NCBI RefSeq assembly: GCF_000315625.1
Contig: NW_005434665.1
Location: forward strand, 136,969-200,968
DNA from: Guillardia theta CCMP2712
Taxonomy: Eukaryota > Protista > Cryptophyta
Direction of reading: 5' to 3'
Length of the DNA stretch: 64,000 nucleotides
Positions 12,783 through 22,440 of the stretch are shown here, in pieces; position 1 is the stretch's first letter; the number at the start of each line of letters is the position of its first letter. The notes under the pieces are model-generated. The model saw only the letters and a program-made list of their open reading frames with translations, did no database searches and was not told the origin of the DNA. The translations under genes and the position numbers were made by a program.

Positions 12783-15759
12783 GAGGGGGGAGTGCCCTTG
12801 CCAAAAGCTACAGTTTCCTCAGTTCATACTCAAGCGCTGCACTTTGGCACGGCCAACCGGGGCATTGTCCCGTGCATGTAGTAAAGAAAGCCCTGCAGTT
12901 AACCCCTAAAGGTTCATAGAAGGCTCCAGACGATTCGATTGGCGAAACGAGGCATGAAAGTGGCATGATGCTGACAGATTTGGATGCGCCTCGCACCTCA
13001 TCGCAGCAGAAAGCGTTAGGATGAGGTCCATGAGGTGGGAGAGCGGGGTGGTGACTTCTAGTAAAAGGAGGGGTCCCCCGCACTCCGAGTACTCCCCAGC
13101 CATGGAGATGCGCTCCGGTTATTGAAACATGATAGACTCTTGAATGGAGCCTGCACGGCTGTGGCTTGCACAGCAGCGGCATCATGATCTGGTGATCGGC
13201 GACCGGATCTCGTGTAGTAAACTGGAATGACTCATCCGGTGTCCGAGTCAGTACGGTCACTCAGTGGAGAGTCGGATCCGATGAAGATGATCAGCAGCGG
13301 CCACTGCCGGCCGACCGGGTGACGGACCCGGTGTCGGCCGGCCAGGCCCTGTGCGGCCCGTACCTTGAACTTTCCAAGAGTCAACTCGCCGCGGGACGGT
13401 GACTGCTGCTTTACTCAAAGTTAAGTGCAGCCTGTCACAAGTTCAACGGCCCGGCGGGCCGGCCGGGCGGCGGCCCGGACCGTGGCCGAGTCACACCGTC
13501 CTGAGTACGGGCCGGGCCGGTCCGATGGCAGACTCCGAACTGGCCGAGTCCGCGGGGCGCCCCACGGTGCCAGGGCACCCGGGACGGTCACTGCACGGCC
13601 ACTGGACCGGCCGCGATCTGCCCGGTGGCATGTGTTGTCGGTCGAGGCATCCGATGCAATCCACGGGGGCCGTGCCTTGCTCGGCCAACAGTGTCACCAA
13701 GTAATTTACTACAGGAATTTCCCAAAGGATGAGTCCTTTATAGGGTCCCAAGTACATCCCTATTTGAAACGATGTATCTCCAGACTAGCTTTACTCCTAT
13801 GAAGAAAACTCCAGAAGGATAACATGAGGTAATCATCCATGACGAAGTCGTGTAGTAGCCATGCAGGGACTGGGGCCCGTGCAAAGGCTGACAACCTCCC
13901 TCAGGTCCCGTGCCATGCTGAACCTGTCTGTGTACCTCCTATTCCGCCCCCTCTCCTACTGCCTCCCTTCCTCTACCTCTTCCCTCCACTCGGCCATTCG
14001 CCCCCATTACATCCAAGAAAGACACATTTACTCCATGTGTGCCATATTGTCTTGCTGCACTACATCCCTCTGACTCCCTCTGCCTCCTCTTGCTCTCTGC
14101 CTCTCTCTGTGCGTTTGCCTTTCCCTCCCCAGACCCAAAACTTTGCCACCGAACTTTCGCTTCCTTCCTTCTGACCCTCTGCCTTCCCACCCCCCCGGGC
14201 CTTCCTCTCCCATGATCGGCAGCTACAATTATGCTGCATTTTTCCTTTAAATTCACTAGTATGAAAATACCTTCAAAGCAATGATGGAAATGCTGTCGAT
14301 CAAACAGCTCACCTTTCATCTGGTCATGACAGGATGAACTTGGAGCTTAGCTCAATAAGAACTTGCGCTGGAATTTCTCTACTAAGAGGAACGCAGTGTG
14401 ACAAAAGGACGTCTATCTTTCTTTATTCTCACACAACCAACAAAACAAGCCAACACGCACTGGTGTAGCACAAACAGACGTGGCACACACACGAAAGGGG
14501 AAGATGACCATCGAGTTCTGACGAGGATGATCCTTTTCTACCTTCCAAGAAGGAGGCAGGAGTACCGTCTCTTGGCTGAGGGAAGCAGGAGTTGTGATCT
14601 CTCCTTGGAAGTTGACAAGCTTCCCTCCTCAGATGTTGAACATCCCTTCAGCTCTTCGTCCTTTTCAGCAGACTCACACTGGAGTAGAGTATCCTCAGGG
14701 CCTTAGTAATCCAGGAGAAGGCAGTTTCGAACACGAATGCGAGACAGCCAACTATCCTTTCCTTTCGCAGTATCATGAGTATTTTTTTACGCAAAGTTAA
14801 GTGAGTATCATCCGATTCTCGGACTCAGACTTTGAGTAAACGGACAGACAGTGACTCAGGCTTTTACTCAAAGTTAAGTCAGGCTACTCCGACTCTCGCT
14901 GTCTTTCAAGTTCTCTGATCTCAGTTTAACTTAAACTTGACTGCGACGGTGAGTAAAGAAGAGTCAACGGCGGCCGTCGGACGGTCCGATCACACAATGA
15001 CCGGCGACGGTCACCGTCTGAGTACGGTCCGATCATACGACTAGCGGCCGGAACTCGTCGGAAGCCTGGGCGGCGGGGAGCCTTCGGCGGAGCGGCTGGG
15101 GCTGCCACCGGTGACCTCGGACGGTGGCCGCCGGGGAACTCAGCGCGGCGGCTCAGTGAGACGGTGCCAGACTCAGAGTACCGTTGACCGTGAGTCGGAC
15201 TCCGATATCGGACCGTCGCGCCGCCCTACACCGGTGACACGGGCCGCCCCCGCCGGCGCCCGGGCCCGGCACCCGGGTGCCGTGATTTCAACTTAGTTTC
15301 GCGGCCGCGGCCGCCTGCCAGTCGGACTCCCGTACTCAGTACGGTGGCCCGCAGTGGCGGAGTCCGACTCGGCCCGGGCTCGGCCGGGCCGGGGGGCTCG
15401 GCCGGGCCGGGGGGCCCGGCCGGGCGGGGCCCCCGCCCGGCGGCCGGCCATACCGGGCAGTTTCCCACCGCTCCCGGCACCTCATTAGTAGTTCATCAAT
15501 TGGGGTACCTTCTTTGATGGGGGTGGGCTGCCTGGTTTGAATTTTTGTACCAGAAATGATTTTTGAGTAATTACATAAAAGTTGTTTTTGAGAGATTTTA
15601 GGATGTATATATGGTACAAAAGCTCCTGGCAACCCCTCTGAATGACCCGGATCCTGAGCACCCCTGTCGAAGCGGATGGCTTTTTGTGATAGCGTCGGGA
15701 GTGCATCCCCCCCTCAGCTCTGCAAGCATAAGCTGTCCTACTATTCGGGATAACGCTTC

Positions 15760-17031
15760 ATGAAGCTCTTCACCTTCTCGACGAGGTCTGGCGGCTTCCT
15801 AGTCCCAACCATCCCCCGCCCCTCCAACCAATCCCCCGTCCCTCCAACCATCCCCCGCCCCTCCAACATGCGTTCTCCCCGCATTTCAAGAGTTGCCGCC
15901 CAAGAAGGGAGGGAGAAAATCAGAAGGGTAACGCTAGTGATGGATGATGACGGGGAAACTCGGAAGCTTGAGAGAGATTGTGTACCTCAAATGATCAAAA
16001 TCCCTTTTTTCTTCTCTCGGATGTTATTTCAGGAAGACACTGACGCTCCTCAACTTGTGCTTTGTGGTAGTAGAGAATCGCAAAAGCGCGAATTTCTAAA
16101 ACCAAGTATGGGAATCTCGTTCTTGGACGTCAACAAACAACTCCGGCATGGTATGATACGAAAAGTAACCGAGAGTCATGTAGATGTTTACATTCTTTAC
16201 ACCAAGGATGTATTGAGACAAGTACAAACCAATGTCTTGAGTGGAGCTCGCTTGACGCAATTCATCTCTAGCCTTGATGATCATGAGTGCTTGCAGAGCA
16301 TCTACACGGACCAAGTTCCATTGCAAGACATTCAGGAAACTGTATTGCTGAACTATGCCCAATTCTCTGTAAGGACTATGCGGTGCAATAGCTTACTGAT
16401 CGTTGGGTGGTTGTACTTCGGAATGCCAGGACGCAAAAGTCAAGAATGTCAATTTTCTTACTTCAATACCATGACGGTTTTACCCCAGCAACTGAAAAAC
16501 TTTGTCGATGTCACTCTTCTGCTTCAACTTACAAATACCATTGAACTTCACTGGGAATTGGAATCGATCAGACGCAGTTTGAACAAGTGGCTGCAGCTGA
16601 GAGGAAAACCAAAGACTCGTTGTCTTGCTGCAGCAAAAGAAGCTCCCTTGAGATTCAATGTGGAGATACAGGATATGCGTGCAATGCTGTTCCTTTTTTC
16701 TGAGATTATGCAAACCGATCCCAATCTTGAAGCAGAGGCAATTAAGTGTTCCACTGTTAGCAAAAGTAGCCTGGTAACATGCTATTGGGTAATTCCTGAG
16801 ACATATCTAAGAACCTCTGTTTTGCAAAAGCACTTGACTATACCCTTTCATGATTCACAACTACGGTTGCCAAATGGGACTGGTAGTATTTACGTGGAGG
16901 GGCCTGTGACAATCAGCTTACGAAGACAGAAAACTGCTAATGAGGCTGGGTTGCTCATTTTCAGATTTTCTAAGATCTATCGTTACGGCTGGACTGGAAA
17001 AGAAATGTGGAGGTTTCCTCCTCTCAAATAG
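15760..17031 (+). CDS. Transposon partner protein (423 aa; alternative start ATG 15868) with a BAH-like segment
   Basis: Long uninterrupted ORF ending 90 bp from the transposase stop. The GMIRKV..HVDVYILYTKD...HECLQSIYTDQVPLQDIQETV segment resembles a BAH domain. Confidence 0.7.
   Translation: MKLFTFSTRSGGFLVPTIPRPSNQSPVPPTIPRPSNMRSPRISRVAAQEGREKIRRVTLVMDDDGETRKLERDCVPQMIKIPFFFSRMLFQEDTDAPQLVLCGSRESQKREFLKPSMGISFLDVNKQLRHGMIRKVTESHVDVYILYTKDVLRQVQTNVLSGARLTQFISSLDDHECLQSIYTDQVPLQDIQETVLLNYAQFSVRTMRCNSLLIVGWLYFGMPGRKSQECQFSYFNTMTVLPQQLKNFVDVTLLLQLTNTIELHWELESIRRSLNKWLQLRGKPKTRCLAAAKEAPLRFNVEIQDMRAMLFLFSEIMQTDPNLEAEAIKCSTVSKSSLVTCYWVIPETYLRTSVLQKHLTIPFHDSQLRLPNGTGSIYVEGPVTISLRRQKTANEAGLLIFRFSKIYRYGWTGKEMWRFPPLK
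15805..15867. repeat. Tandem 19-20 bp repeat CCAACC(A)ATCCCCCGCCCCT, ~3.3 copies
   Basis: Units at 15805-15823, 15824-15843 and 15844-15862, plus a partial copy ending just before ATG 15868. Confidence 0.9.
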
Positions 17032-17121
17032 TTTGTTTATAGCGGCCGGCTTACCAAGTCCATTTCAAGAGTCGTGGCAAGCTCATCCGCGCCAAAGATA
17101 GCACAGAAATAAAATTTTCAT

Positions 17122-19638
17122 TTATGTACTATTCAAAACCACTTGTAATTGTTTTGCTTTGCGTTCTAAATTGAACCAACTTACCATGCTCAGCGATGCT
17201 AAGGCGTAGTAAGACCAGGCTGCTTGGCGCGACTCCATCAAAGGTTCATGTTCTCCTTCACGGCGACGTTTCTTTGAGACGAATGCATTCACCTCTGGTT
17301 GGACTTGAAGATATGAAGGTCTTCCAAAATGTCTGTGGCGATTCTCGACGTTACTAATGTTCAGTAATCCAAGAGGGATCCCATATTGTACCAAACGGTC
17401 GTAGAATTGTTGGCCAATGTGCCCAACAAGGAGCGAGTGGAAGTAGAATGACTGCATCAAAGTAGGATCTCCAACCAGATCGATAATGTTGAGCATGAGA
17501 TTTCTCAATCTTACTGGAACGGTCAAACCGATTTCAAAATTCAGGTTTTCAATTTTTTCAATTTCTTGACACTTCAGCATGCTGCTTAGCAAGTCCCATT
17601 CTTGCATTACTTGAGTCCATTGTTCTCTGTCATCTGCATAGGCAGGATCGCTGTAAAGGGTATTGATAACCACTGCGGCATTTTTGACGAATCGGGCACA
17701 TTGTTCCCCGTTCAATTTTCTATTATGAGACTTCTCAGTGAATTGCACATTCACTCCTTGCTCTTGTAATCGAAGGTTGACTGTCGCGACCTTTCTCATC
17801 TGCGCCGCTTTCTCTTGGAGGCAACCAATAATCATGTTCGTCGTTCTTATGAAAGCATGAAACGAGCAACAAGCTGCTTCGCCGCTGCATCTGTCCATTT
17901 CAATGAGACGAATCACTGGGATCTTTGTTCCAATTTCCATGATCAATTCTGGGTCTTGCAGATAATTTTGCAGTCGAGTCTGATTTTCTTCAGCTAATAA
18001 CTCTTGGAATTCTCCTTCCGAGGTATCGAACATTCGTTGGAAAGCATCGGGACTTTTCAACATTCTGTTTAATTTCTTGATGCCCTCGGTAGACATGACT
18101 AGTCTTTCACACACTTGGGACAGAGTTTCGTCGCAAACGATTGTTTCGATTTCGAAATATTTGCCAGCCTTGTGATCTTTTAGGAGTTCGTTACAGTGGA
18201 GACAGAACTTACCCTCATTGTCGGACATTCCACCAATGCCGTACATATTCCATTGCCCTTGCAAATCAGATCTCTTGACGAACTCCACTTGGATAATCTT
18301 GTCAGGCTTACCACCTGCTAAAGTCTTTTGAAGTCCCCCGACTGCTTGATTGTTGTAGACGTGAATACCTTTCTCCTTCAAGAGATCAATAACTTGATCA
18401 TATGCAGCTCTCACAGTCCTCTGAAAAACCTCAGGACTGTCTCCATATGGAATGTAGGACATCGTCATAAGGCATGATGAACTTCGGACAAGCTTTTGCC
18501 AGAATTTCCATTCTTTCTTCGAACAGTCTACGCCGTAAGGGAAAATGGAAATGGTGACTTCAGTTGCCTTCTGAGGATTGCCAGCCGAGAAAGTCATTGT
18601 TGCACAGTCATAGTTGATCGTGATAACAAGGCGATGCTTCCCGTGAAGTTTGAAGATATCAATCCACTCTTCGACAAGTTGAAGGAGGCCGAGACAATGT
18701 GTCCCATCTGGCAAACAGAACAGTTTGAATCTTTCGCACATCGCATGCTTCTCTTGTACTCTAACCCGTGATATTTTTGGCATTGGAATAAAGCAGCCAG
18801 CCATGCTATCGTTTGCACGACAGAATCCTTGGTACTGCGATTTCGTTATACCGTTTGCTGTCAGGGCAACTGCTGCCTCTCGCGCGCTCGGCATCATTTG
18901 CCTGACCGCAGGTTTCAGGCAGTTTTGAAGCTCCTTATTCGTGGCAAGTTCATTTTTTATGACTGTCTTGAAGGCTTGACTGCTCAGAATGCCTTCAAAG
19001 AACGTAAGGCTATCGTATTTCGAAGTTTTGCACTTCTTCTGCTTTCGAGGCCCCTCGGCCGCTTCCTGTCCAGAGTCATCCTCACACTGGTGGTGAAATA
19101 GATCAGCAAAATGTCCCCATTTCACTCGACAATTGGCCTTGTGTGACGCAAAGTGCCGATCTACCTTCTTCGTGACCACATCTAGAAGGTCCTCATCAGT
19201 GTCACCCTGGATCTTCTTCAGAATCGCTGTTTTCACTTTTGGATCTTTGATAGAATCGTAACAAGCCGGAATTGGTTCATCAGAGTCGGAAATAATCCCT
19301 TCGCGTATGGCTTCATCCACATGATGACTAAAACCTCTCTGCTCCTCATACTCTTGTAAGATTCGAAGCAACAACTCAGGAGATCTACCTGCATCTCAGG
19401 TGTTACAAAGATTTGAATTATACAAATAATCTCTTTTCAAACCTATGGCCTTCAGGCAAGCATTGACATTAGGTTGTCCTTGCCATTTTCCTTGTTTATA
19501 GAGGAAGCCCGCTCGACTTGCCAGAGACTCCCAGGTGAGCAATTCATCGTCTTCCAGGGTGATCGTTTGTTTGCGACGTCTGCACGAACTTCCTTGCAAA
19601 GGTGGGGATGACGGATTTGATAGATTTGGTCCTGACAT
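17122..19638 (-). CDS. RAG1/Transib-like DDE transposase, ~820 aa, two exons (19638-19443 and 19388-17122)
   Basis: A 54-nt GT-AG intron (19389-19442) joins the 80-aa and 750-aa ORFs in frame (..KAIG|RSPELLLR..). Ordered motifs INYD, RSDL, FCLHC, SFHAF, KLNGEQ, YFH-x5-H and SNVEN parallel RAG1 D600, D708, C727/C730, H795, NG, YFH..H and E962. Confidence 0.8.
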
Positions 19639-22440
19639 GGTTAATCAATGTTTTAATGTTCAAAATGCCAGGCCAAATTTCAAGATCCCACTGACATGTC
19701 TCTCAACTTGTGCCGTGGCGACTGGCCTGTGGAAAAAATTCAAATCCCTGAAATAGGGATGGGTGGGGAACAGGGGGGACTACCCTACCCCCTATTTGTG
19801 AAAGCACTAGCAGAAAAGGACCCGGTGACTTCATTCTTGTACTAAACCCAGAAACACAGTACACAATGAATTTGAATCAGGCACAAAATATTTTCGAACC
19901 TTAGTATTGAATTTCTAAGTCTTTTCTACTGTGTTTCCAATTTATATTTATTTTATGATTATCCGTATCCTTCTAAAACGTTTTCGCAGCCTTAAAACAT
20001 GTCGTCTGTTAAAAGTTTCGAGGGGAGTGGGGTGGTCTTGAAGGTTACCGCCCATGACAATTCAAATACCCCACCCCCTATTACTAGATGATAATGGGGG
20101 TAAAAGGGTGCTTCTGTGCGAGGGTAAGTACCCGTATATGAGCAGTCAAAAGTACCGGTCATTGAAAGCGCTAATCAGTAATCCTGGAATTTCATATACC
20201 GGTGCAGCCCCCTGAATCCCAATATGGCGGCGGCGCCGGGTCCGTCAGTGGCAGCCTCAGACCGTGAGCGGCCCTTTCGGAACTTCGGAACTTCGGAACT
20301 TCGGTCGGAGAGTCAAAGTTCCGGTCCCGGACTGACCACTGAGGAGTCCGACGCCGGTCCGGCGGGCCGCGGCCGGGCTGGGCCCGGCGCCGCCGCCGCA
20401 GTGCCGCCTCGCCGACTCCGGGCGGCCGGCCGGGCATGTATACTGACTCTGTGAGACTATTTGAAGCGGCGGTGGCCCGGGCGTGACCCTTCCCAAAGTG
20501 ACAGAATTTCCCATCGTATCAGAGAGGGGTGGGGGTCTTGAATTTCTACTTGAATGTGACATGGGATTGAGAGAGTCCTCTATACCTATGATCTCAATTG
20601 GGAATACCTCTACCATATCGTAGGGGCATGCAGAAGAATGGTCTTGTTGAAGAATTAGAGGGTAGGGGGTGGGTGATTGACAGCAGTGCGAAGGGGCGGA
20701 ACCAGGGAGTAGGGGTCAGCTGTGTTTGCCAGTTCCACCGAGCCTTTGCGGGCGGGTAGGGTGGTATGGAAATAGTAATTAGAAGGGGTACAGGCAACAT
20801 TTGAGGGTAGATGCCATCAATAAAGAGGGTAGGGTACTCTGTGTTGACAGGGGTGTAGAAATTTCAGGAATGTTTTAGAATTGGTGTCGACTAGAGTTGA
20901 GCTCTTCGATTTCAAATTTCTCATAAGATGATTTCAAAGATAAACAGGATGTTATCCAAATTTATCCCAAATGGGTGGGGGTATGATGATGCAGGCAACG
21001 GAGGCGATAGGACATTGCAGATCGGCAATGCTGTAGGCTCCTTTCGCATCTGCTCGACGAAGAAAGAGACATAGGGAAGATGGAAAAGATGAATGAACAA
21101 TAGACGTCGAAGTGAACTCCGAGTGTTGAAACCTGAATGCTGAGCAATGTAGTCTGACGCATGGGTAATACATCCGGGGGGCAAATTGAAATCATTCCAA
21201 CTTCCATGAAATAGGCGGATAGTGAAACAGAGAATCCTACATCTATGTATTTCACAGTAGAACAAAGAGTAGTATGCATTTGTAGAATGTAGAGAGAGGC
21301 CATGAAATTAACCTGATGTGGAAGTGGAAGAGAAGAGGTAACTAAACCAACCAGAATCGGTCGTGAGAGATTTTCGTCGTGGTTGCGAGATCAGGAGAGA
21401 ATAGTTGGGCAGTGAACTTCAACTGCTTATGCTTTGAATACCACAGGAACAAACATTTGAAGCAAGTGAAGAGGTTGAATTTAGTAAATAGCCATCCCCT
21501 GCAGGTGTGGTCGTCTAGTACGGTTGTGAGGTTTTAGAGCATTGATTTGAATTCGCCAAGATGCTGTTTTCAACTCGATTGAACGTAATTGTGCAGGTCA
21601 TGAGAACAAAACTCGAAGGTATTCCAGAACCGCCAAGTGGGTATGTGCCTCCCCTTGGCGCTTCGCACAGAACGTGGACCAACATCTACAAGAACAAGGG
21701 AAGGATTGACTACTGCGTATCTCAATTCTCTGTGAGTGAACGTCTTTGTGCTTCTTGCATTGTTAGTGACAGGATTGACAGTACCTCACTAACCGCTTGA
21801 AGTGCGTGGCAAAGGTATGTTTCTCTTGTTTGCAATAACCAATCAATTCGTCCTAACGACGTCTTCGCAGCTCACCGGCGGTCCGTTCTTGGACTAGAAG
21901 ATCGTATTGAGAACGAAAAACATGGTATGTGTACCCGTCAGGCGGTAAAATACGAATACATATCCCAACCAGTGGGAGTTACGGTTTCGAAATGCAAACT
22001 AGTCATGGATACGTAAATGCATACTTGAGGTCATTTTCTTCACACATGTTGATTCATACTCTGCATAGTGCATAAGATTGCAGAATATTCGGAACATGTT
22101 GACTCTTGCTATGCCAACCATACAACTCTAACCCGGGGATCCCTTGTCTCCTTGAAATCGATGAATTCATGAGGAAGGGACTTGACACACATGCGTGTCC
22201 AGAGAGTAGCCAGGAACCAGCATTCCGAATTCAACTTCTTTCATGCATGATCGGTACTTCGATGCAGCACAAGATGTCGTGATTTCCAGTTTATTGGATA
22301 CAAATAGCAAACAGGAAAGGCGTAAGGCCCTTTACAGGCTCGACCAACACTGTCAGTGTTAGACAAGAACATCCTTTTGTACAAAGACAACAAGGATCGG
22401 TGCTAGTCGTGTCTGTGCATGACGACTAGTCATGACTCAC

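What the first reader, a model, noticed from the sequence alone, without database searches (positions are those of the whole stretch)
17122..19638. Intact ~820-aa transposase with the ordered RAG1 catalytic and Zn-binding motif series
Seen, in order: D in INYD (18607-18609); GDSPE; D in RSDL (18265-18267); CLHC (18193-18204); H in SFHAF (17857-17859); NG in KLNGEQ (17707-17712); YFH (17437-17445); H (17419-17421); LGLL; E in SNVEN (17344-17346). These parallel RAG1 D600, DESDHE, D708, CTLC, LH795, RMNGN, YFHKTLAH, IGAW and E962. The frame is unbroken and one clean 54-nt host-sized intron joins a basic N-terminal exon. Inference: the element is recent, active or domesticated. The H-x5-H spacing and lack of an E959 equivalent suggest a divergent lineage; CACTA/Mirage/Chapaev share the CxxC/H/H-H motifs, so placement needs a tree.
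Basis: partly seen in the sequence, partly recalled or inferred. Interest (0 to 1): 0.85.

Follow-up and report, generated by a model that had tools for sequence, protein, structure and literature searches.

The report
RAG1-fold transposon with BAH partner
This is an intact, expressed copy of a jumping gene in a cryptophyte alga whose cutting enzyme has the same three-dimensional fold as the RAG1 antibody-gene recombinase yet is unrecognisable by sequence, and which always travels with a second gene for a chromatin-reading (BAH-type) protein instead of RAG2.

Summary
The 54-nt intron (19389-19442) is spliced in RNA reads, giving an 820-aa product.

No Pfam or PDB sequence search recognises the protein. 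An AlphaFold model (pLDDT 78) matches only RAG1, BbRAGL and HzTransib at the top: Z 18.6 over about 430 residues, spanning RAG1 459-1008. P element scores Z 12.9.

All proposed catalytic and zinc residues are invariant across a small family of 21 proteins from Guillardia theta, Hanusia phi and a few metagenome contigs.

The gene lies in a 4,778-bp element (15449-20226) with 5'-CATA..TATG-3' ends. The element is multicopy, has deletion derivatives, occurs at different sites and is expressed. It is an active-type DNA transposon, not a domesticated gene.

In seven loci the transposase lies tail-to-tail with a co-diverging partner gene. The partner's confident core folds as a BAH domain (Z 10.8), not a kelch propeller.

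Two points stay open. Placement inside the CACTA-Mirage-Chapaev-Transib (CMCT) group is unresolved: protein-language-model (PLM) neighbours are RAG1 and Chapaev/DUF1280, but predicted CACTA models fit about as well. No clear target-site duplication was seen.

The scan noted the same two-gene unit on this stretch and on another piece of this genome.

The parts
15449..20226 (-). Whole transposon copy, 4,778 bp. It has low GC (about 0.43) and sits between GC-rich (0.70-0.79) flanks.
   Evidence: Similarity to independent copies L012-L015, L006 and L008 stops exactly at 15449 and 20226, with unrelated flanks beyond. GC profile. Word depth in DNA run X1 is 331-1450 on the element against 33 and 101 on the flanks.
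20215..20226 (-). Transposase-side terminus. It reads 5'-CATATTGGGATT on the minus strand.
   Evidence: Same terminus behind three different flanks: window, L012/L014 and L013. Conserved among copies.
15449..15472 (+). Partner-side terminus. It reads 5'-CATACCGGGCAGTTTCCCACCGCT on the plus strand. With the other end it forms a 9-bp imperfect inverted repeat, CATAYYGGG, so the element is 5'-CA..TG-3'.
   Evidence: Same terminus before three different flanks: window, L012/L013 and L014. L008 has one mismatch.
19443..19638 (-). Transposase exon 1: ATG at 19638, 65 codons plus 1 base, basic N-terminus.
   Evidence: This segment is homologous to the N-termini of P0015, P0013 and P0014. It has the highest RNA read depth in X23.
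19389..19442 (-). 54-nt GT..AG intron, phase 1.
   Evidence: Spliced joint in raw RNA reads of X23 and in a contig of X7. In copy L012 the intron is read through in frame, giving 838 aa = 820 + 18.
17122..19388 (-). Transposase exon 2, stop codon included. ORF residues 159-746 form a RAG1-core-like fold.
   Evidence: AF2 model at pLDDT 78.2, pTM 0.74. Foldseek and VIA hits. dN/dS 0.19 against copies L006 and L008.
18607..18609 (-). D256, proposed first catalytic Asp, near the end of strand E248-258.
   Evidence: Invariant in 11 of 11.
18265..18267 (-). D370, proposed second catalytic Asp, directly after strand E359-368.
   Evidence: Invariant in 12 of 12.
17344..17346 (-). E677, proposed catalytic Glu, at the start of helix 674-699.
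   Evidence: Kept in 10 of 11; the exception is a Hanusia transcript that diverges at its C-terminus.
18193..18204 (-). C391-x2-C394, the C(2)C zinc motif, 21 residues after D370.
   Evidence: Invariant.
17419..17439 (-). H646-x5-H652 zinc motif, 25 residues before E677.
   Evidence: Invariant in 12 of 12. The spacing is one residue longer than the H(3-4)H given for the CMCT group in PMC12730594.
15760..17031 (+). Partner gene, 423-aa ORF, convergent with the transposase; the stops are 90 nt apart. The true start may be Met37 at 15868, because copies align only from there.
   Evidence: Homologous partners lie tail-to-tail with the transposase in L003, L004, L005, L009, L010 and L012 (alignments). 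Copy similarity resumes at 15868.
16108..16470 (+). BAH-like domain of the partner, residues about 117-237.
   Evidence: Model region pLDDT 64-84. Foldseek: 28 of the 30 best hits are BAH-domain chains or BAH-containing assemblies (MTA1/NuRD), and the other two are DNMT1, which carries BAH domains. In an exhaustive VIA search the 19 best of 48,161 chains are all BAH-containing, Z 5.3-10.8 (18 of them at Z 7.5 or more); the next chain scores Z 4.7.
15805..15867 (+). Three tandem copies of an approximately 20-nt unit, encoding PTIPRPSN repeats. This stretch varies between copies.
   Evidence: family D3. There is a similarity gap at 15666-15867 between copies.

Best explanation
Window 15449-20226 is an intact, autonomous copy of a two-gene cut-and-paste DNA transposon of a cryptophyte alga (Guillardia theta or a very close relative).

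Gene 1 (minus strand, two exons, 820 aa) encodes a DDE transposase. Its core has the whole RAG1/Transib architecture: dimerisation/DNA-binding domain, pre-RNase H, RNase H, C2 and H2 zinc modules, and C-terminal domain. Proposed catalytic residues are D256, D370 and E677. The proposed structural zinc site is C391/C394/H646/H652.

Gene 2 (plus strand, convergent, 387-423 aa) encodes a protein with a BAH-type domain. I infer that it is an accessory subunit that tethers or licenses the transposase on chromatin, the role that RAG2 with its PHD finger plays for RAG1.

By sequence the element is a new, very divergent lineage of the CACTA-Mirage-Chapaev-Transib ('CMCT') group. Its closest solved relatives are RAG1 and Transib.

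Shown: intact ORFs, splicing, expression, the fold, residue invariance, multiple copies at different sites, and conserved synteny with co-divergence of the two genes. Inferred: catalysis by these residues, cut-and-paste via 5'-CA..TG-3' ends, physical interaction with the partner, and chromatin targeting.
For: Fold:
- Foldseek's top 49 hits are all RAG1, BbRAGL or HzTransib, E 1e-8 to 1e-4. The next hit is P element at 2e-2.
- VIA-align: Z 18.6, rmsd 4.0 A, 430 residues aligned to zebrafish RAG1 480-1028. Z 18.6 over 418 residues to HzTransib 21-477. BbRAGL Z 17.4, P element 12.9, Hermes 8.4.

Language-model features: the nearest named clusters are RAG1_RNase_H/ZnC2/ZnH2 at 0.96.

Residues:
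- All motif residues are invariant in the family.
- They sit where an RNase H fold needs them.
- Spacings are D-114-D, D-21-C, H-25-E. In mouse RAG1 they are 108, 19 and 20 (RAG1 numbers recalled from the literature, not computed here).

Mobility:
- Six other contigs share the exact ends but have different flanks.
- L012-L015 are 100% identical copies with at least two different flanks on each side.
- One copy interrupts the integrase of a chromodomain LTR retrotransposon.
- Internal-deletion derivatives exist: L006 lacks 16350-16866 and L008 lacks 18261-19387.
- Word depth is raised and variant contigs are fragmented in DNA run X1.
- Guillardia theta has several paralogous 'hypothetical proteins' of three subfamilies, and Hanusia phi has transcripts.
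- dN/dS is 0.19.

Expression: spliced RNA reads, with strand-matched reads over both genes.

Partner: tail-to-tail in 7 loci. Identity of transposase/partner to the window copy falls in step: 93/88, 45/51, 35/33, 26/28 and 24/29%. BAH fold.

Against: - No sequence method links it to RAG1/Transib or to any family. Pfam at E up to 10 on 13 members, PDB phmmer and profile searches, and motif-segment searches all gave nothing.
- The D-D-E geometry could not be measured, because no coordinates are available.
- Termini begin CATA, not the CAC of Transib, RSS or CACTA, and the inverted repeat is only 9 bp.
- No convincing target-site duplication. The L012 insertion allows at most 1 bp. The window flanks give CCGGC/GCGGC, 4 of 5 in a G+C-only context.
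- His spacing is H(5)H, not H(3-4)H.
- Predicted CACTA models align nearly as well as RAG1 models, so 'RAG1/Transib' is not yet separated from other CMCT lineages.
- The partner model is poor overall (pLDDT 46.7) and Pfam BAH does not hit any partner.
- No evidence of physical interaction or of transposition activity.
Confidence: 0.8

Rival explanations
1. It is a Chapaev-like (or other CMC) transposon rather than a Transib/RAG-side lineage. The RAG1 resemblance would then be only the shared ancestry of the whole CMCT group.
For: DUF1280 clusters are among the nearest neighbours by features (7 of 60; 19 + 6 of 60 named). By shape the best row is a Mucoromycota cluster with 16% DUF1280, TM 0.67 by that row. 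DUF1280 is equated with Chapaev in PMC3985635. Plant CACTA Transposase_21 models reach TM 0.47-0.51 over 421-469 residues. No CMC structure is in the PDB, so could not have shown one. The C(2)C and H-H motifs are common to the whole group.
Against: Pfam DUF1280, DUF1258 and Transposase_21 hit no family member even at E 10. No Transposase_21 cluster is among the 60 nearest by features. The top-scoring named clusters are RAG1. PMC3985635 itself groups DUF1280 with RAG1, apart from Mirage/CACTA, so this rival partly collapses into the main reading.
Confidence: 0.3
2. It is a domesticated host gene pair, a RAG-like recombinase system working for the alga, and no longer a mobile element.
For: Both ORFs are intact. 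dN/dS is 0.19. The mRNA is spliced with a host-type intron. Relatives are present and transcribed in two cryptophyte genera.
Against: Many copies share precise ends but have different flanks, including one inside a retrotransposon gene. Deletion and frameshifted copies exist. Several diverged subfamilies occur per genome. Composition differs from the flanks. Purifying selection between copies is also expected for an active transposon family.
Confidence: 0.07
3. The BAH-like gene is a passenger or self-defence gene of the element, for example one that counteracts host silencing, and not a subunit of the transposase.
For: Other CMCT, hAT and Harbinger elements carry passenger chromatin or epigenetic genes such as TET/JBP (PMC12730594). 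No interaction data exist. The region outside the BAH core is unmodelled.
Against: The fixed tail-to-tail position and the co-divergence, from 93% down to about 25% identity in 7 loci, are what is seen for RAG1L-RAG2L. TET/JBP genes, by contrast, were repeatedly exchanged between elements.
Confidence: 0.25

Closest known systems
Transib transposases and RAG1/RAG1L (HzTransib 6PQX, RAG1 6DBO/4WWX, BbRAGL 6B40)
   Same: Same multi-domain core fold over about 430 residues (Z 17.4-18.6). Same order D..D..C(2)C..H-H..E. 5'-CA..TG-3' ends. Eukaryotic cut-and-paste element.
   Different: About 10-13% identity in structural alignments and no detectable sequence homology. H(5)H spacing. An extra segment of about 80 residues (407-490) after C(2)C. 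Termini CATA rather than CAC(A/G)GTG. No 5-bp TSD seen. A different N-terminal region encoded partly by a separate exon.
RAGL / ProtoRAG two-gene transposons, including AanRAGL of the alga Aureococcus (Tao et al. 2022, PMC9435367)
   Same: A transposase plus a closely linked second gene inside the inverted repeats. The arrangement is convergent, as in ProtoRAG and vertebrate RAG1-RAG2. The partner carries a chromatin-reader-type fold, comparable to the PHD finger of RAG2. A unicellular alga as host has a precedent.
   Different: The partner is BAH-like, not a kelch propeller with PHD. The transposase lies outside what RAG1/Transib homology searches recover. TIRs are not RSS-like. No 5-bp TSD.
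CMCT group: CACTA/EnSpm, Mirage, Chapaev (DUF1280), ESTA, Plavaka, Lanisha (Kojima 2025, PMC12730594; Majorek 2014, PMC3985635)
   Same: [quoted passage not shown] Chapaev/DUF1280 clusters are among the nearest neighbours. ESTA was likewise linked to RAG1 only by HHpred.
   Different: No Pfam hit to DUF1280, DUF1258 or Transposase_21. H(5)H spacing. A TSD of 2-5 bp is not confirmed. A BAH partner is not reported for these lineages in the papers I could search.
BAH-domain chromatin readers (MTA1, ORC1, PBRM1, DNMT1, Sir3, EBS/SHL, AIPP3) and, as a functional analogue, chromodomain integrases of chromoviruses
   Same: The partner's residues 117-237 superpose on BAH domains at Z 8-10.8, rmsd 2.3-3.6 A, over 93-110 residues.
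   Different: No sequence match to Pfam BAH. Whether a methyl-lysine pocket exists is unknown. The rest of the protein has no recognised fold.

Membership tests
RAG1/Transib superfamily | Overall fold of the RAG1 core or Transib transposase (DDBD, pre-RNase H, RNase H, ZnC2, ZnH2, CTD) | tested here: met
   Z 18.6 to RAG1 (480-1028) and to HzTransib (21-477), model residues 159-746. The top 49 Foldseek hits are all from this family.
RAG1/Transib superfamily | D, D, E catalytic triad on an RNase H fold with a long insertion before E | tested here: inconclusive
   D256 lies on beta-1, D370 after beta-4 and E677 at a helix start. All are conserved.
RAG1/Transib superfamily | Zinc site C-x2-C plus H-x(3-4)-H | tested here: inconclusive
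   C391-x2-C394 is present and invariant. The His pair is invariant but spaced H-x5-H.
RAG1/Transib superfamily | Sequence-profile membership (Pfam RAG1 models; homology to solved RAG1/Transib chains) | tested here: not met
   No hit at E up to 10 for 13 members. No PDB hit by sequence, profile or motif segments.
RAG1/Transib superfamily | TIRs starting 5'-CAC (heptamer-like) and a 5-bp TSD | tested here: not met
   The ends are 5'-CATATTGGG / CATACCGGG, sharing only CA. The L012 insertion allows at most 1 bp of duplication. The window shows CCGGC/GCGGC, 4 of 5. Only two insertions have both flanks known.
RAGL (ProtoRAG-type) transposon | RAG2-like partner: six-bladed kelch propeller, with or without a PHD finger | tested here: not met
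   The partner's only confident domain is BAH-like. There is no kelch Pfam hit. The rest of the model is low-confidence, so a small additional domain cannot be excluded.
CMCT group (Kojima 2025) | [quoted passage not shown] | tested here: met
   Definition taken from PMC12730594. The His spacing is one residue longer than stated there.
CMCT group (Kojima 2025) | 2-5 bp TSD | tested here: inconclusive
   The two insertions examined show 0-2 bp.
CMC: CACTA / Mirage / Chapaev | Match to Transposase_21, DUF1258 or DUF1280 profiles | tested here: not met
   No hit at E up to 10. DUF1280 clusters are, however, near by features and by shape.
BAH domain (partner protein) | BAH beta-barrel fold | tested here: met
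   The 19 best of 48,161 chains are BAH-containing proteins, Z 5.3-10.8 (18 of them at Z 7.5 or more); the next chain scores Z 4.7. Foldseek E 1e-5.
BAH domain (partner protein) | Pfam PF01426 sequence match, and a histone- or nucleosome-binding pocket | tested here: not met
   No Pfam hit in any of 6 partners at E up to 10. The binding pocket is not testable with these tools.

The most novel reading that the evidence does not exclude
A previously unrecognised superfamily-level lineage of RAG1-fold transposons, so far seen in cryptophytes, works as a two-subunit machine: a RAG1-like DDE transposase plus a BAH-domain nucleosome or histone-mark reader encoded tail-to-tail. On this reading, the 'recombinase plus chromatin reader, convergent genes' design of RAG1-RAG2 arose more than once, or is older than RAG2 itself. 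The near-absence of a target duplication would point to an unusual integration step.
Probability: 0.35. Interest if true: 0.85.

Novelty: new variant of a known kind. Interest (0 to 1): 0.72.

Why it matters
[quoted passage not shown] Known RAG-like transposons were all found by homology to RAG1 or RAG2, so lineages beyond sequence detectability are invisible to those surveys.

This family shows that such lineages exist. The fold of the whole RAG1 core is kept at about 11% identity. It also shows that a RAG1-fold transposase can be stably paired, in the same convergent layout, with a different chromatin-reader partner. That makes testable whether a chromatin-binding subunit is a general requirement of this enzyme class.

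The copies appear recently active, and both genes are intact and short. The element is therefore also a tractable system for biochemistry: hairpin formation, the 12/23-like asymmetry of the ends, and target choice.

Tried and rejected
- Sequence searches gave nothing for RAG1, Transib, Chapaev or CACTA. Tried: Pfam on the protein and on all 13 aligned relatives up to E 10; PDB phmmer, a family profile and two motif-rich segments.
- The word-indexed protein search found only a near-identical fragment. The exhaustive HMMER search found just 21 relatives.
- The search for related loci with the wide alignment failed for lack of conserved words. With a narrower alignment it found 3 metagenome loci, none in viral contigs and none in prokaryote genomes.
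- Long TIRs were searched with the repeat finder on the window and on L003-L005. None was found. CACNNTG heptamers are not enriched and none sits at the ends.
- A possible second shared subterminal block (CCAG..GATT.TTGA at about 40 nt from one end and about 100 nt from the other) scored only weakly. I do not rely on it.
- The three Guillardia loci of the P0013 subfamily (L004, L016, L017) were fetched to define ends in a real assembly. They are collinear over more than 10 kb at 99%, so they are segmental or allelic duplicates and say nothing about termini.
- The partner has no usable hit by language-model features or by Pfam.
- A RAG2-like kelch reading of the partner was considered and rejected on the fold.
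- A tree with RAG1L, Transib, Chapaev, CACTA and Mirage, and hhalign against them, could not be done. No tool returned such sequences and typing them from memory is not acceptable.
- Literature searches for this family in Guillardia or other cryptophytes, and for BAH partners of transposases, found nothing relevant.
Full report
**Observation**

The minus strand carries a 750-aa stop-free ORF (17122-19374) preceded by an 80-aa ATG-started ORF (19396-19638).
- D256 (18607-18609)
- GDSPE from residue 311
- D370 (18265-18267)
- C391-x2-C394 (18193-18204)
- H506 (17857-17859)
- N555-G556 (17707-17712)
- H646 and H652 (17437-17439 and 17419-17421; H-x5-H)
- E677 (17344-17346)

The proposed intron 19389-19442 is 54 nt, GT..AG on the minus strand and phase 1. 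Joining the exons gives an 820-codon CDS.

Public reads confirm splicing. A joint that skips exactly these 54 nt is seen in three raw RNA-seq reads of run X23. Nine more reads have a loose end that is the exon-2 sequence. One contig of run X7 shows the same joint. In X23, reads whose first mate lies on the minus strand cover the transposase, and first-mate-plus reads cover the neighbouring plus-strand gene. This fits two convergent transcripts if first mates are sense, as the spliced reads indicate. Depth is low, and many reads differ from the window by 1-10%, so several copies are transcribed.

**What the protein is**

Sequence methods are blind to it:
- no Pfam family at E up to 1
- none in any of 13 aligned relatives at E up to 10
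- no PDB chain by phmmer, by a family profile, or with the two most motif-rich segments alone

An exhaustive HMMER search of 1.84 billion representatives found only 21 relatives. By exact look-up these are 'hypothetical proteins' of Guillardia theta CCMP2712, transcripts of Hanusia phi, and a few metagenome contigs. The Guillardia proteins include GUITHDRAFT_114463 (95% identical to the window copy), _107925 and _149260.

An AlphaFold2 model built on the 13-sequence alignment is good (pLDDT 78.2, pTM 0.74). Foldseek against the PDB returns RAG1, BbRAGL and HzTransib as all 49 hits below E 1e-3; the next hit is P element at 2e-2. VIA-align results:

| Target | Z | Details |
|---|---|---|
| Zebrafish RAG1, residues 480-1028 | 18.6 | rmsd 4.0 A, 430 aligned |
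| HzTransib, residues 21-477 | 18.6 | 418 aligned |
| BbRAGL | 17.4 | |
| P element | 12.9 | |
| Hermes | 8.4 | |

The match spans model residues 159-746, equivalent to mouse RAG1 459-1008. That is the whole core except the nonamer-binding domain.

The three proposed catalytic residues sit where an RNase H fold needs them. D256 lies near the end of strand 248-258. D370 lies just after strand 359-368. E677 lies at the start of helix 674-699. The spacings D-114-D, D-21-C and H-25-E parallel RAG1's 108, 19 and 20; the RAG1 numbers come from the literature, not from a computation here.

D256, D312, D370, C391, C394, C503, H506, R510, G556, H646 and H652 are invariant in every relative covering them. 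E677 is kept in 10 of 11.

I could not measure D-D-E distances, because model coordinates are not exposed.

**Limits of the RAG1 reading**

No CMC transposase has a solved structure, so the PDB cannot separate Transib from CACTA, Mirage or Chapaev. Against predicted ESM Atlas models, the nearest clusters were:

| Cluster | TM by query / by row |
|---|---|
| Mucoromycota cluster, 16% DUF1280 | 0.51 / 0.67 |
| Arthropod cluster with RAG1_RNase_H (Transib-like) | 0.53 / 0.64 |
| Vertebrate RAG1 | 0.51 / 0.41 |
| Plant CACTA Transposase_21 (three clusters) | 0.41-0.51 / 0.39-0.51 |

By language-model features, the nearest named clusters are RAG1 (0.96, 188-192 of 256 features) and DUF1280. No Transposase_21 cluster appears among 60.

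Majorek et al. 2014 equate DUF1280 with Chapaev. They place it with RAG1, apart from Mirage and CACTA.

[quoted passage not shown] The present family meets the motif and terminus criteria, with H(5)H. I file it as a new, very divergent CMCT lineage on the RAG1/Transib/Chapaev side. A tree is still needed.

**It is a transposon**

Six other contigs define the element. Similarity to the window stops exactly at 15449 and 20226, giving 4,778 bp, with unrelated sequence beyond.

- **Ends.** In transposase orientation the element reads 5'-CATATTGGGATT ... CTGCCCGGTATG-3'. This is a 9-bp imperfect inverted repeat CATAYYGGG, and both termini are conserved between copies.
- **Identical copies.** L012-L015 are 100% identical to each other over the element. 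They carry at least two different flanks on each side.
- **Intact copy elsewhere.** L012 encodes an 838-aa transposase (intron read through in frame) and a 432-aa partner.
- **Insertion into a retrotransposon.** The L012 copy lies inside the pol gene of a chromodomain LTR retrotransposon. RT-RNaseH-H2C2-rve is on one side and SH3_Tf2-1 plus Chromo on the other.
- **Deletion derivatives.** L006 lacks 16350-16866. L008 lacks 18261-19387. Both have stops or frameshifts.
- **Copy number.** In DNA run X1 the word depth is 331-1450 on the element against 33 and 101 on the flanks. The element is assembled as many short variant contigs.
- **Composition.** The element is 0.43 GC, inside a 0.70-0.79 GC minisatellite-like region.
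- **Selection.** Between copies, transposase dN/dS is 0.19.

This is the picture of a recently active family, not a domesticated single-copy gene.

**Target duplication**

Joining the L012 flanks restores the integrase reading frame (..SGLT|PFEIIYGR..) only if a single base is counted once. The duplication there is therefore at most 1 bp.

The window flanks read CCGGC and GCGGC. That is 4 of 5 in a G+C-only context, which is not significant.

No 5-bp (Transib/RAG) or 3-bp (CACTA) TSD is supported, but only two insertions have both flanks known.

**The partner gene**

A 423-aa ORF (15760-17031, plus strand) ends 90 nt from the transposase stop. Its start is perhaps Met37 at 15868, where similarity between copies resumes.

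Homologous ORFs lie tail-to-tail with the transposase in L012, L005, L009, L003, L004 (Guillardia) and L010 (alignments). Identities to the window copy fall in step for the two genes:

| Locus | Transposase % identity | Partner % identity |
|---|---|---|
| L012 | 93 | 88 |
| L005 | 45 | 51 |
| L009 | 35 | 33 |
| L003 | 26 | 28 |
| L004 | 24 | 29 |
| L010 | 32 | 27 |

The L009 and L010 transposases are partial, so their identities rest on short aligned stretches.

The partner's AlphaFold model is poor overall (pLDDT 46.7), but residues about 110-200 reach 64-84. In Foldseek, 28 of the 30 best hits are BAH-domain chains or BAH-containing assemblies such as MTA1/NuRD, at E 1e-5 to 1e-3; the other two are DNMT1, which itself carries BAH domains. 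An exhaustive VIA search of 48,161 chains puts 19 BAH-containing proteins first. These include MTA1 (Z 10.8, rmsd 2.3 A over 93 residues), ORC1b (10.6), PBRM1 (10.1), DNMT1, EBS, AIPP3, Sir3 and others. Eighteen of them score Z 7.5 or more and the nineteenth 5.3; the next chain scores Z 4.7. Atlas models agree.

There is no kelch propeller, and no Pfam BAH hit.

I infer an accessory subunit that binds nucleosomes or a histone mark and directs or licenses the transposase. This would be functionally parallel to RAG2's PHD finger and to chromodomains of chromoviral integrases. It is an inference only. A passenger or anti-silencing role is the main alternative.

**Comparison with what is known**

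RAG-like two-gene transposons are known down to the alga Aureococcus, and Transib-like genes in bacteria, fungi and plants (Tao et al. 2022). All of these were found by homology to RAG1, RAG2 or Transib.

The present family would not be found that way. It also carries a different partner, different termini and no evident TSD.

Full-text searches found no paper on such elements in Guillardia or other cryptophytes, and none on BAH partners of transposases. Repbase itself could not be consulted, so an unpublished Repbase entry cannot be excluded.

**Verdict**

I rate the element a new variant of a known kind. Its main interest lies in the combination of a RAG1-fold enzyme beyond sequence detectability with a conserved convergent chromatin-reader partner.

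Noticed in passing
window 18103-18354 (transposase residues about 407-490): An extra helical/beta segment between the C(2)C motif and H506 gives a weak LysM-like match (4uz2, Z 4.7, rmsd 2.1 A over 48 residues). The first-stage note s1-430803 raised the same idea. The score is too low to accept.
   Followed up: partly
window 15000-15448 and 20227-20450: Both flanks of the element are very GC-rich (0.70-0.79). They share GGGCTCGGCCGGGCCGGG-type minisatellite units. The element appears to have landed inside a GC-rich repeat tract.
   Followed up: partly
L012 1-2947 and 7599-10320: An intact copy of the element interrupts the integrase gene of a chromodomain-bearing Ty3/gypsy-type retrotransposon, between the rve core and the SH3/chromo domains.
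   Followed up: yes
L004 2016-2424 and 6805-7208; L004/L016/L017 7200-13200: In Guillardia theta, the P0013-subfamily unit has a roughly 400-nt fragment of its partner-gene end repeated 4,789 nt upstream. It is followed in all three scaffolds by the same protein-kinase gene and a 332-nt tandem array. The three scaffolds are 99% collinear over more than 10 kb, so they are segmental or allelic duplicates.
   Followed up: partly
window 17010-17180: The two stop codons are 90 nt apart, and RNA reads of both orientations overlap there. The convergent transcripts probably overlap at their 3' ends and could form double-stranded RNA.
   Followed up: no
ESM Atlas clusters: For both the transposase and the partner, the nearest or near-nearest predicted-structure cluster is an unnamed Mucoromycota family. 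Similar two-gene elements may exist in those fungi.
   Followed up: no
window 19877-19987: Contigs of runs X6 and X7 skip 109 nt here, in the region upstream of the transposase start. The ends are non-canonical (CA..CG), so this is more likely a deletion variant among copies than an intron.
   Followed up: no
L006, L008, L002 (JGI lake metagenomes) and runs X12, X16, X18: Contigs 90-95% identical to this element of a marine cryptophyte turn up in freshwater and lake metagenomes. This could mean a related freshwater cryptophyte or carry-over between libraries.
   Followed up: no
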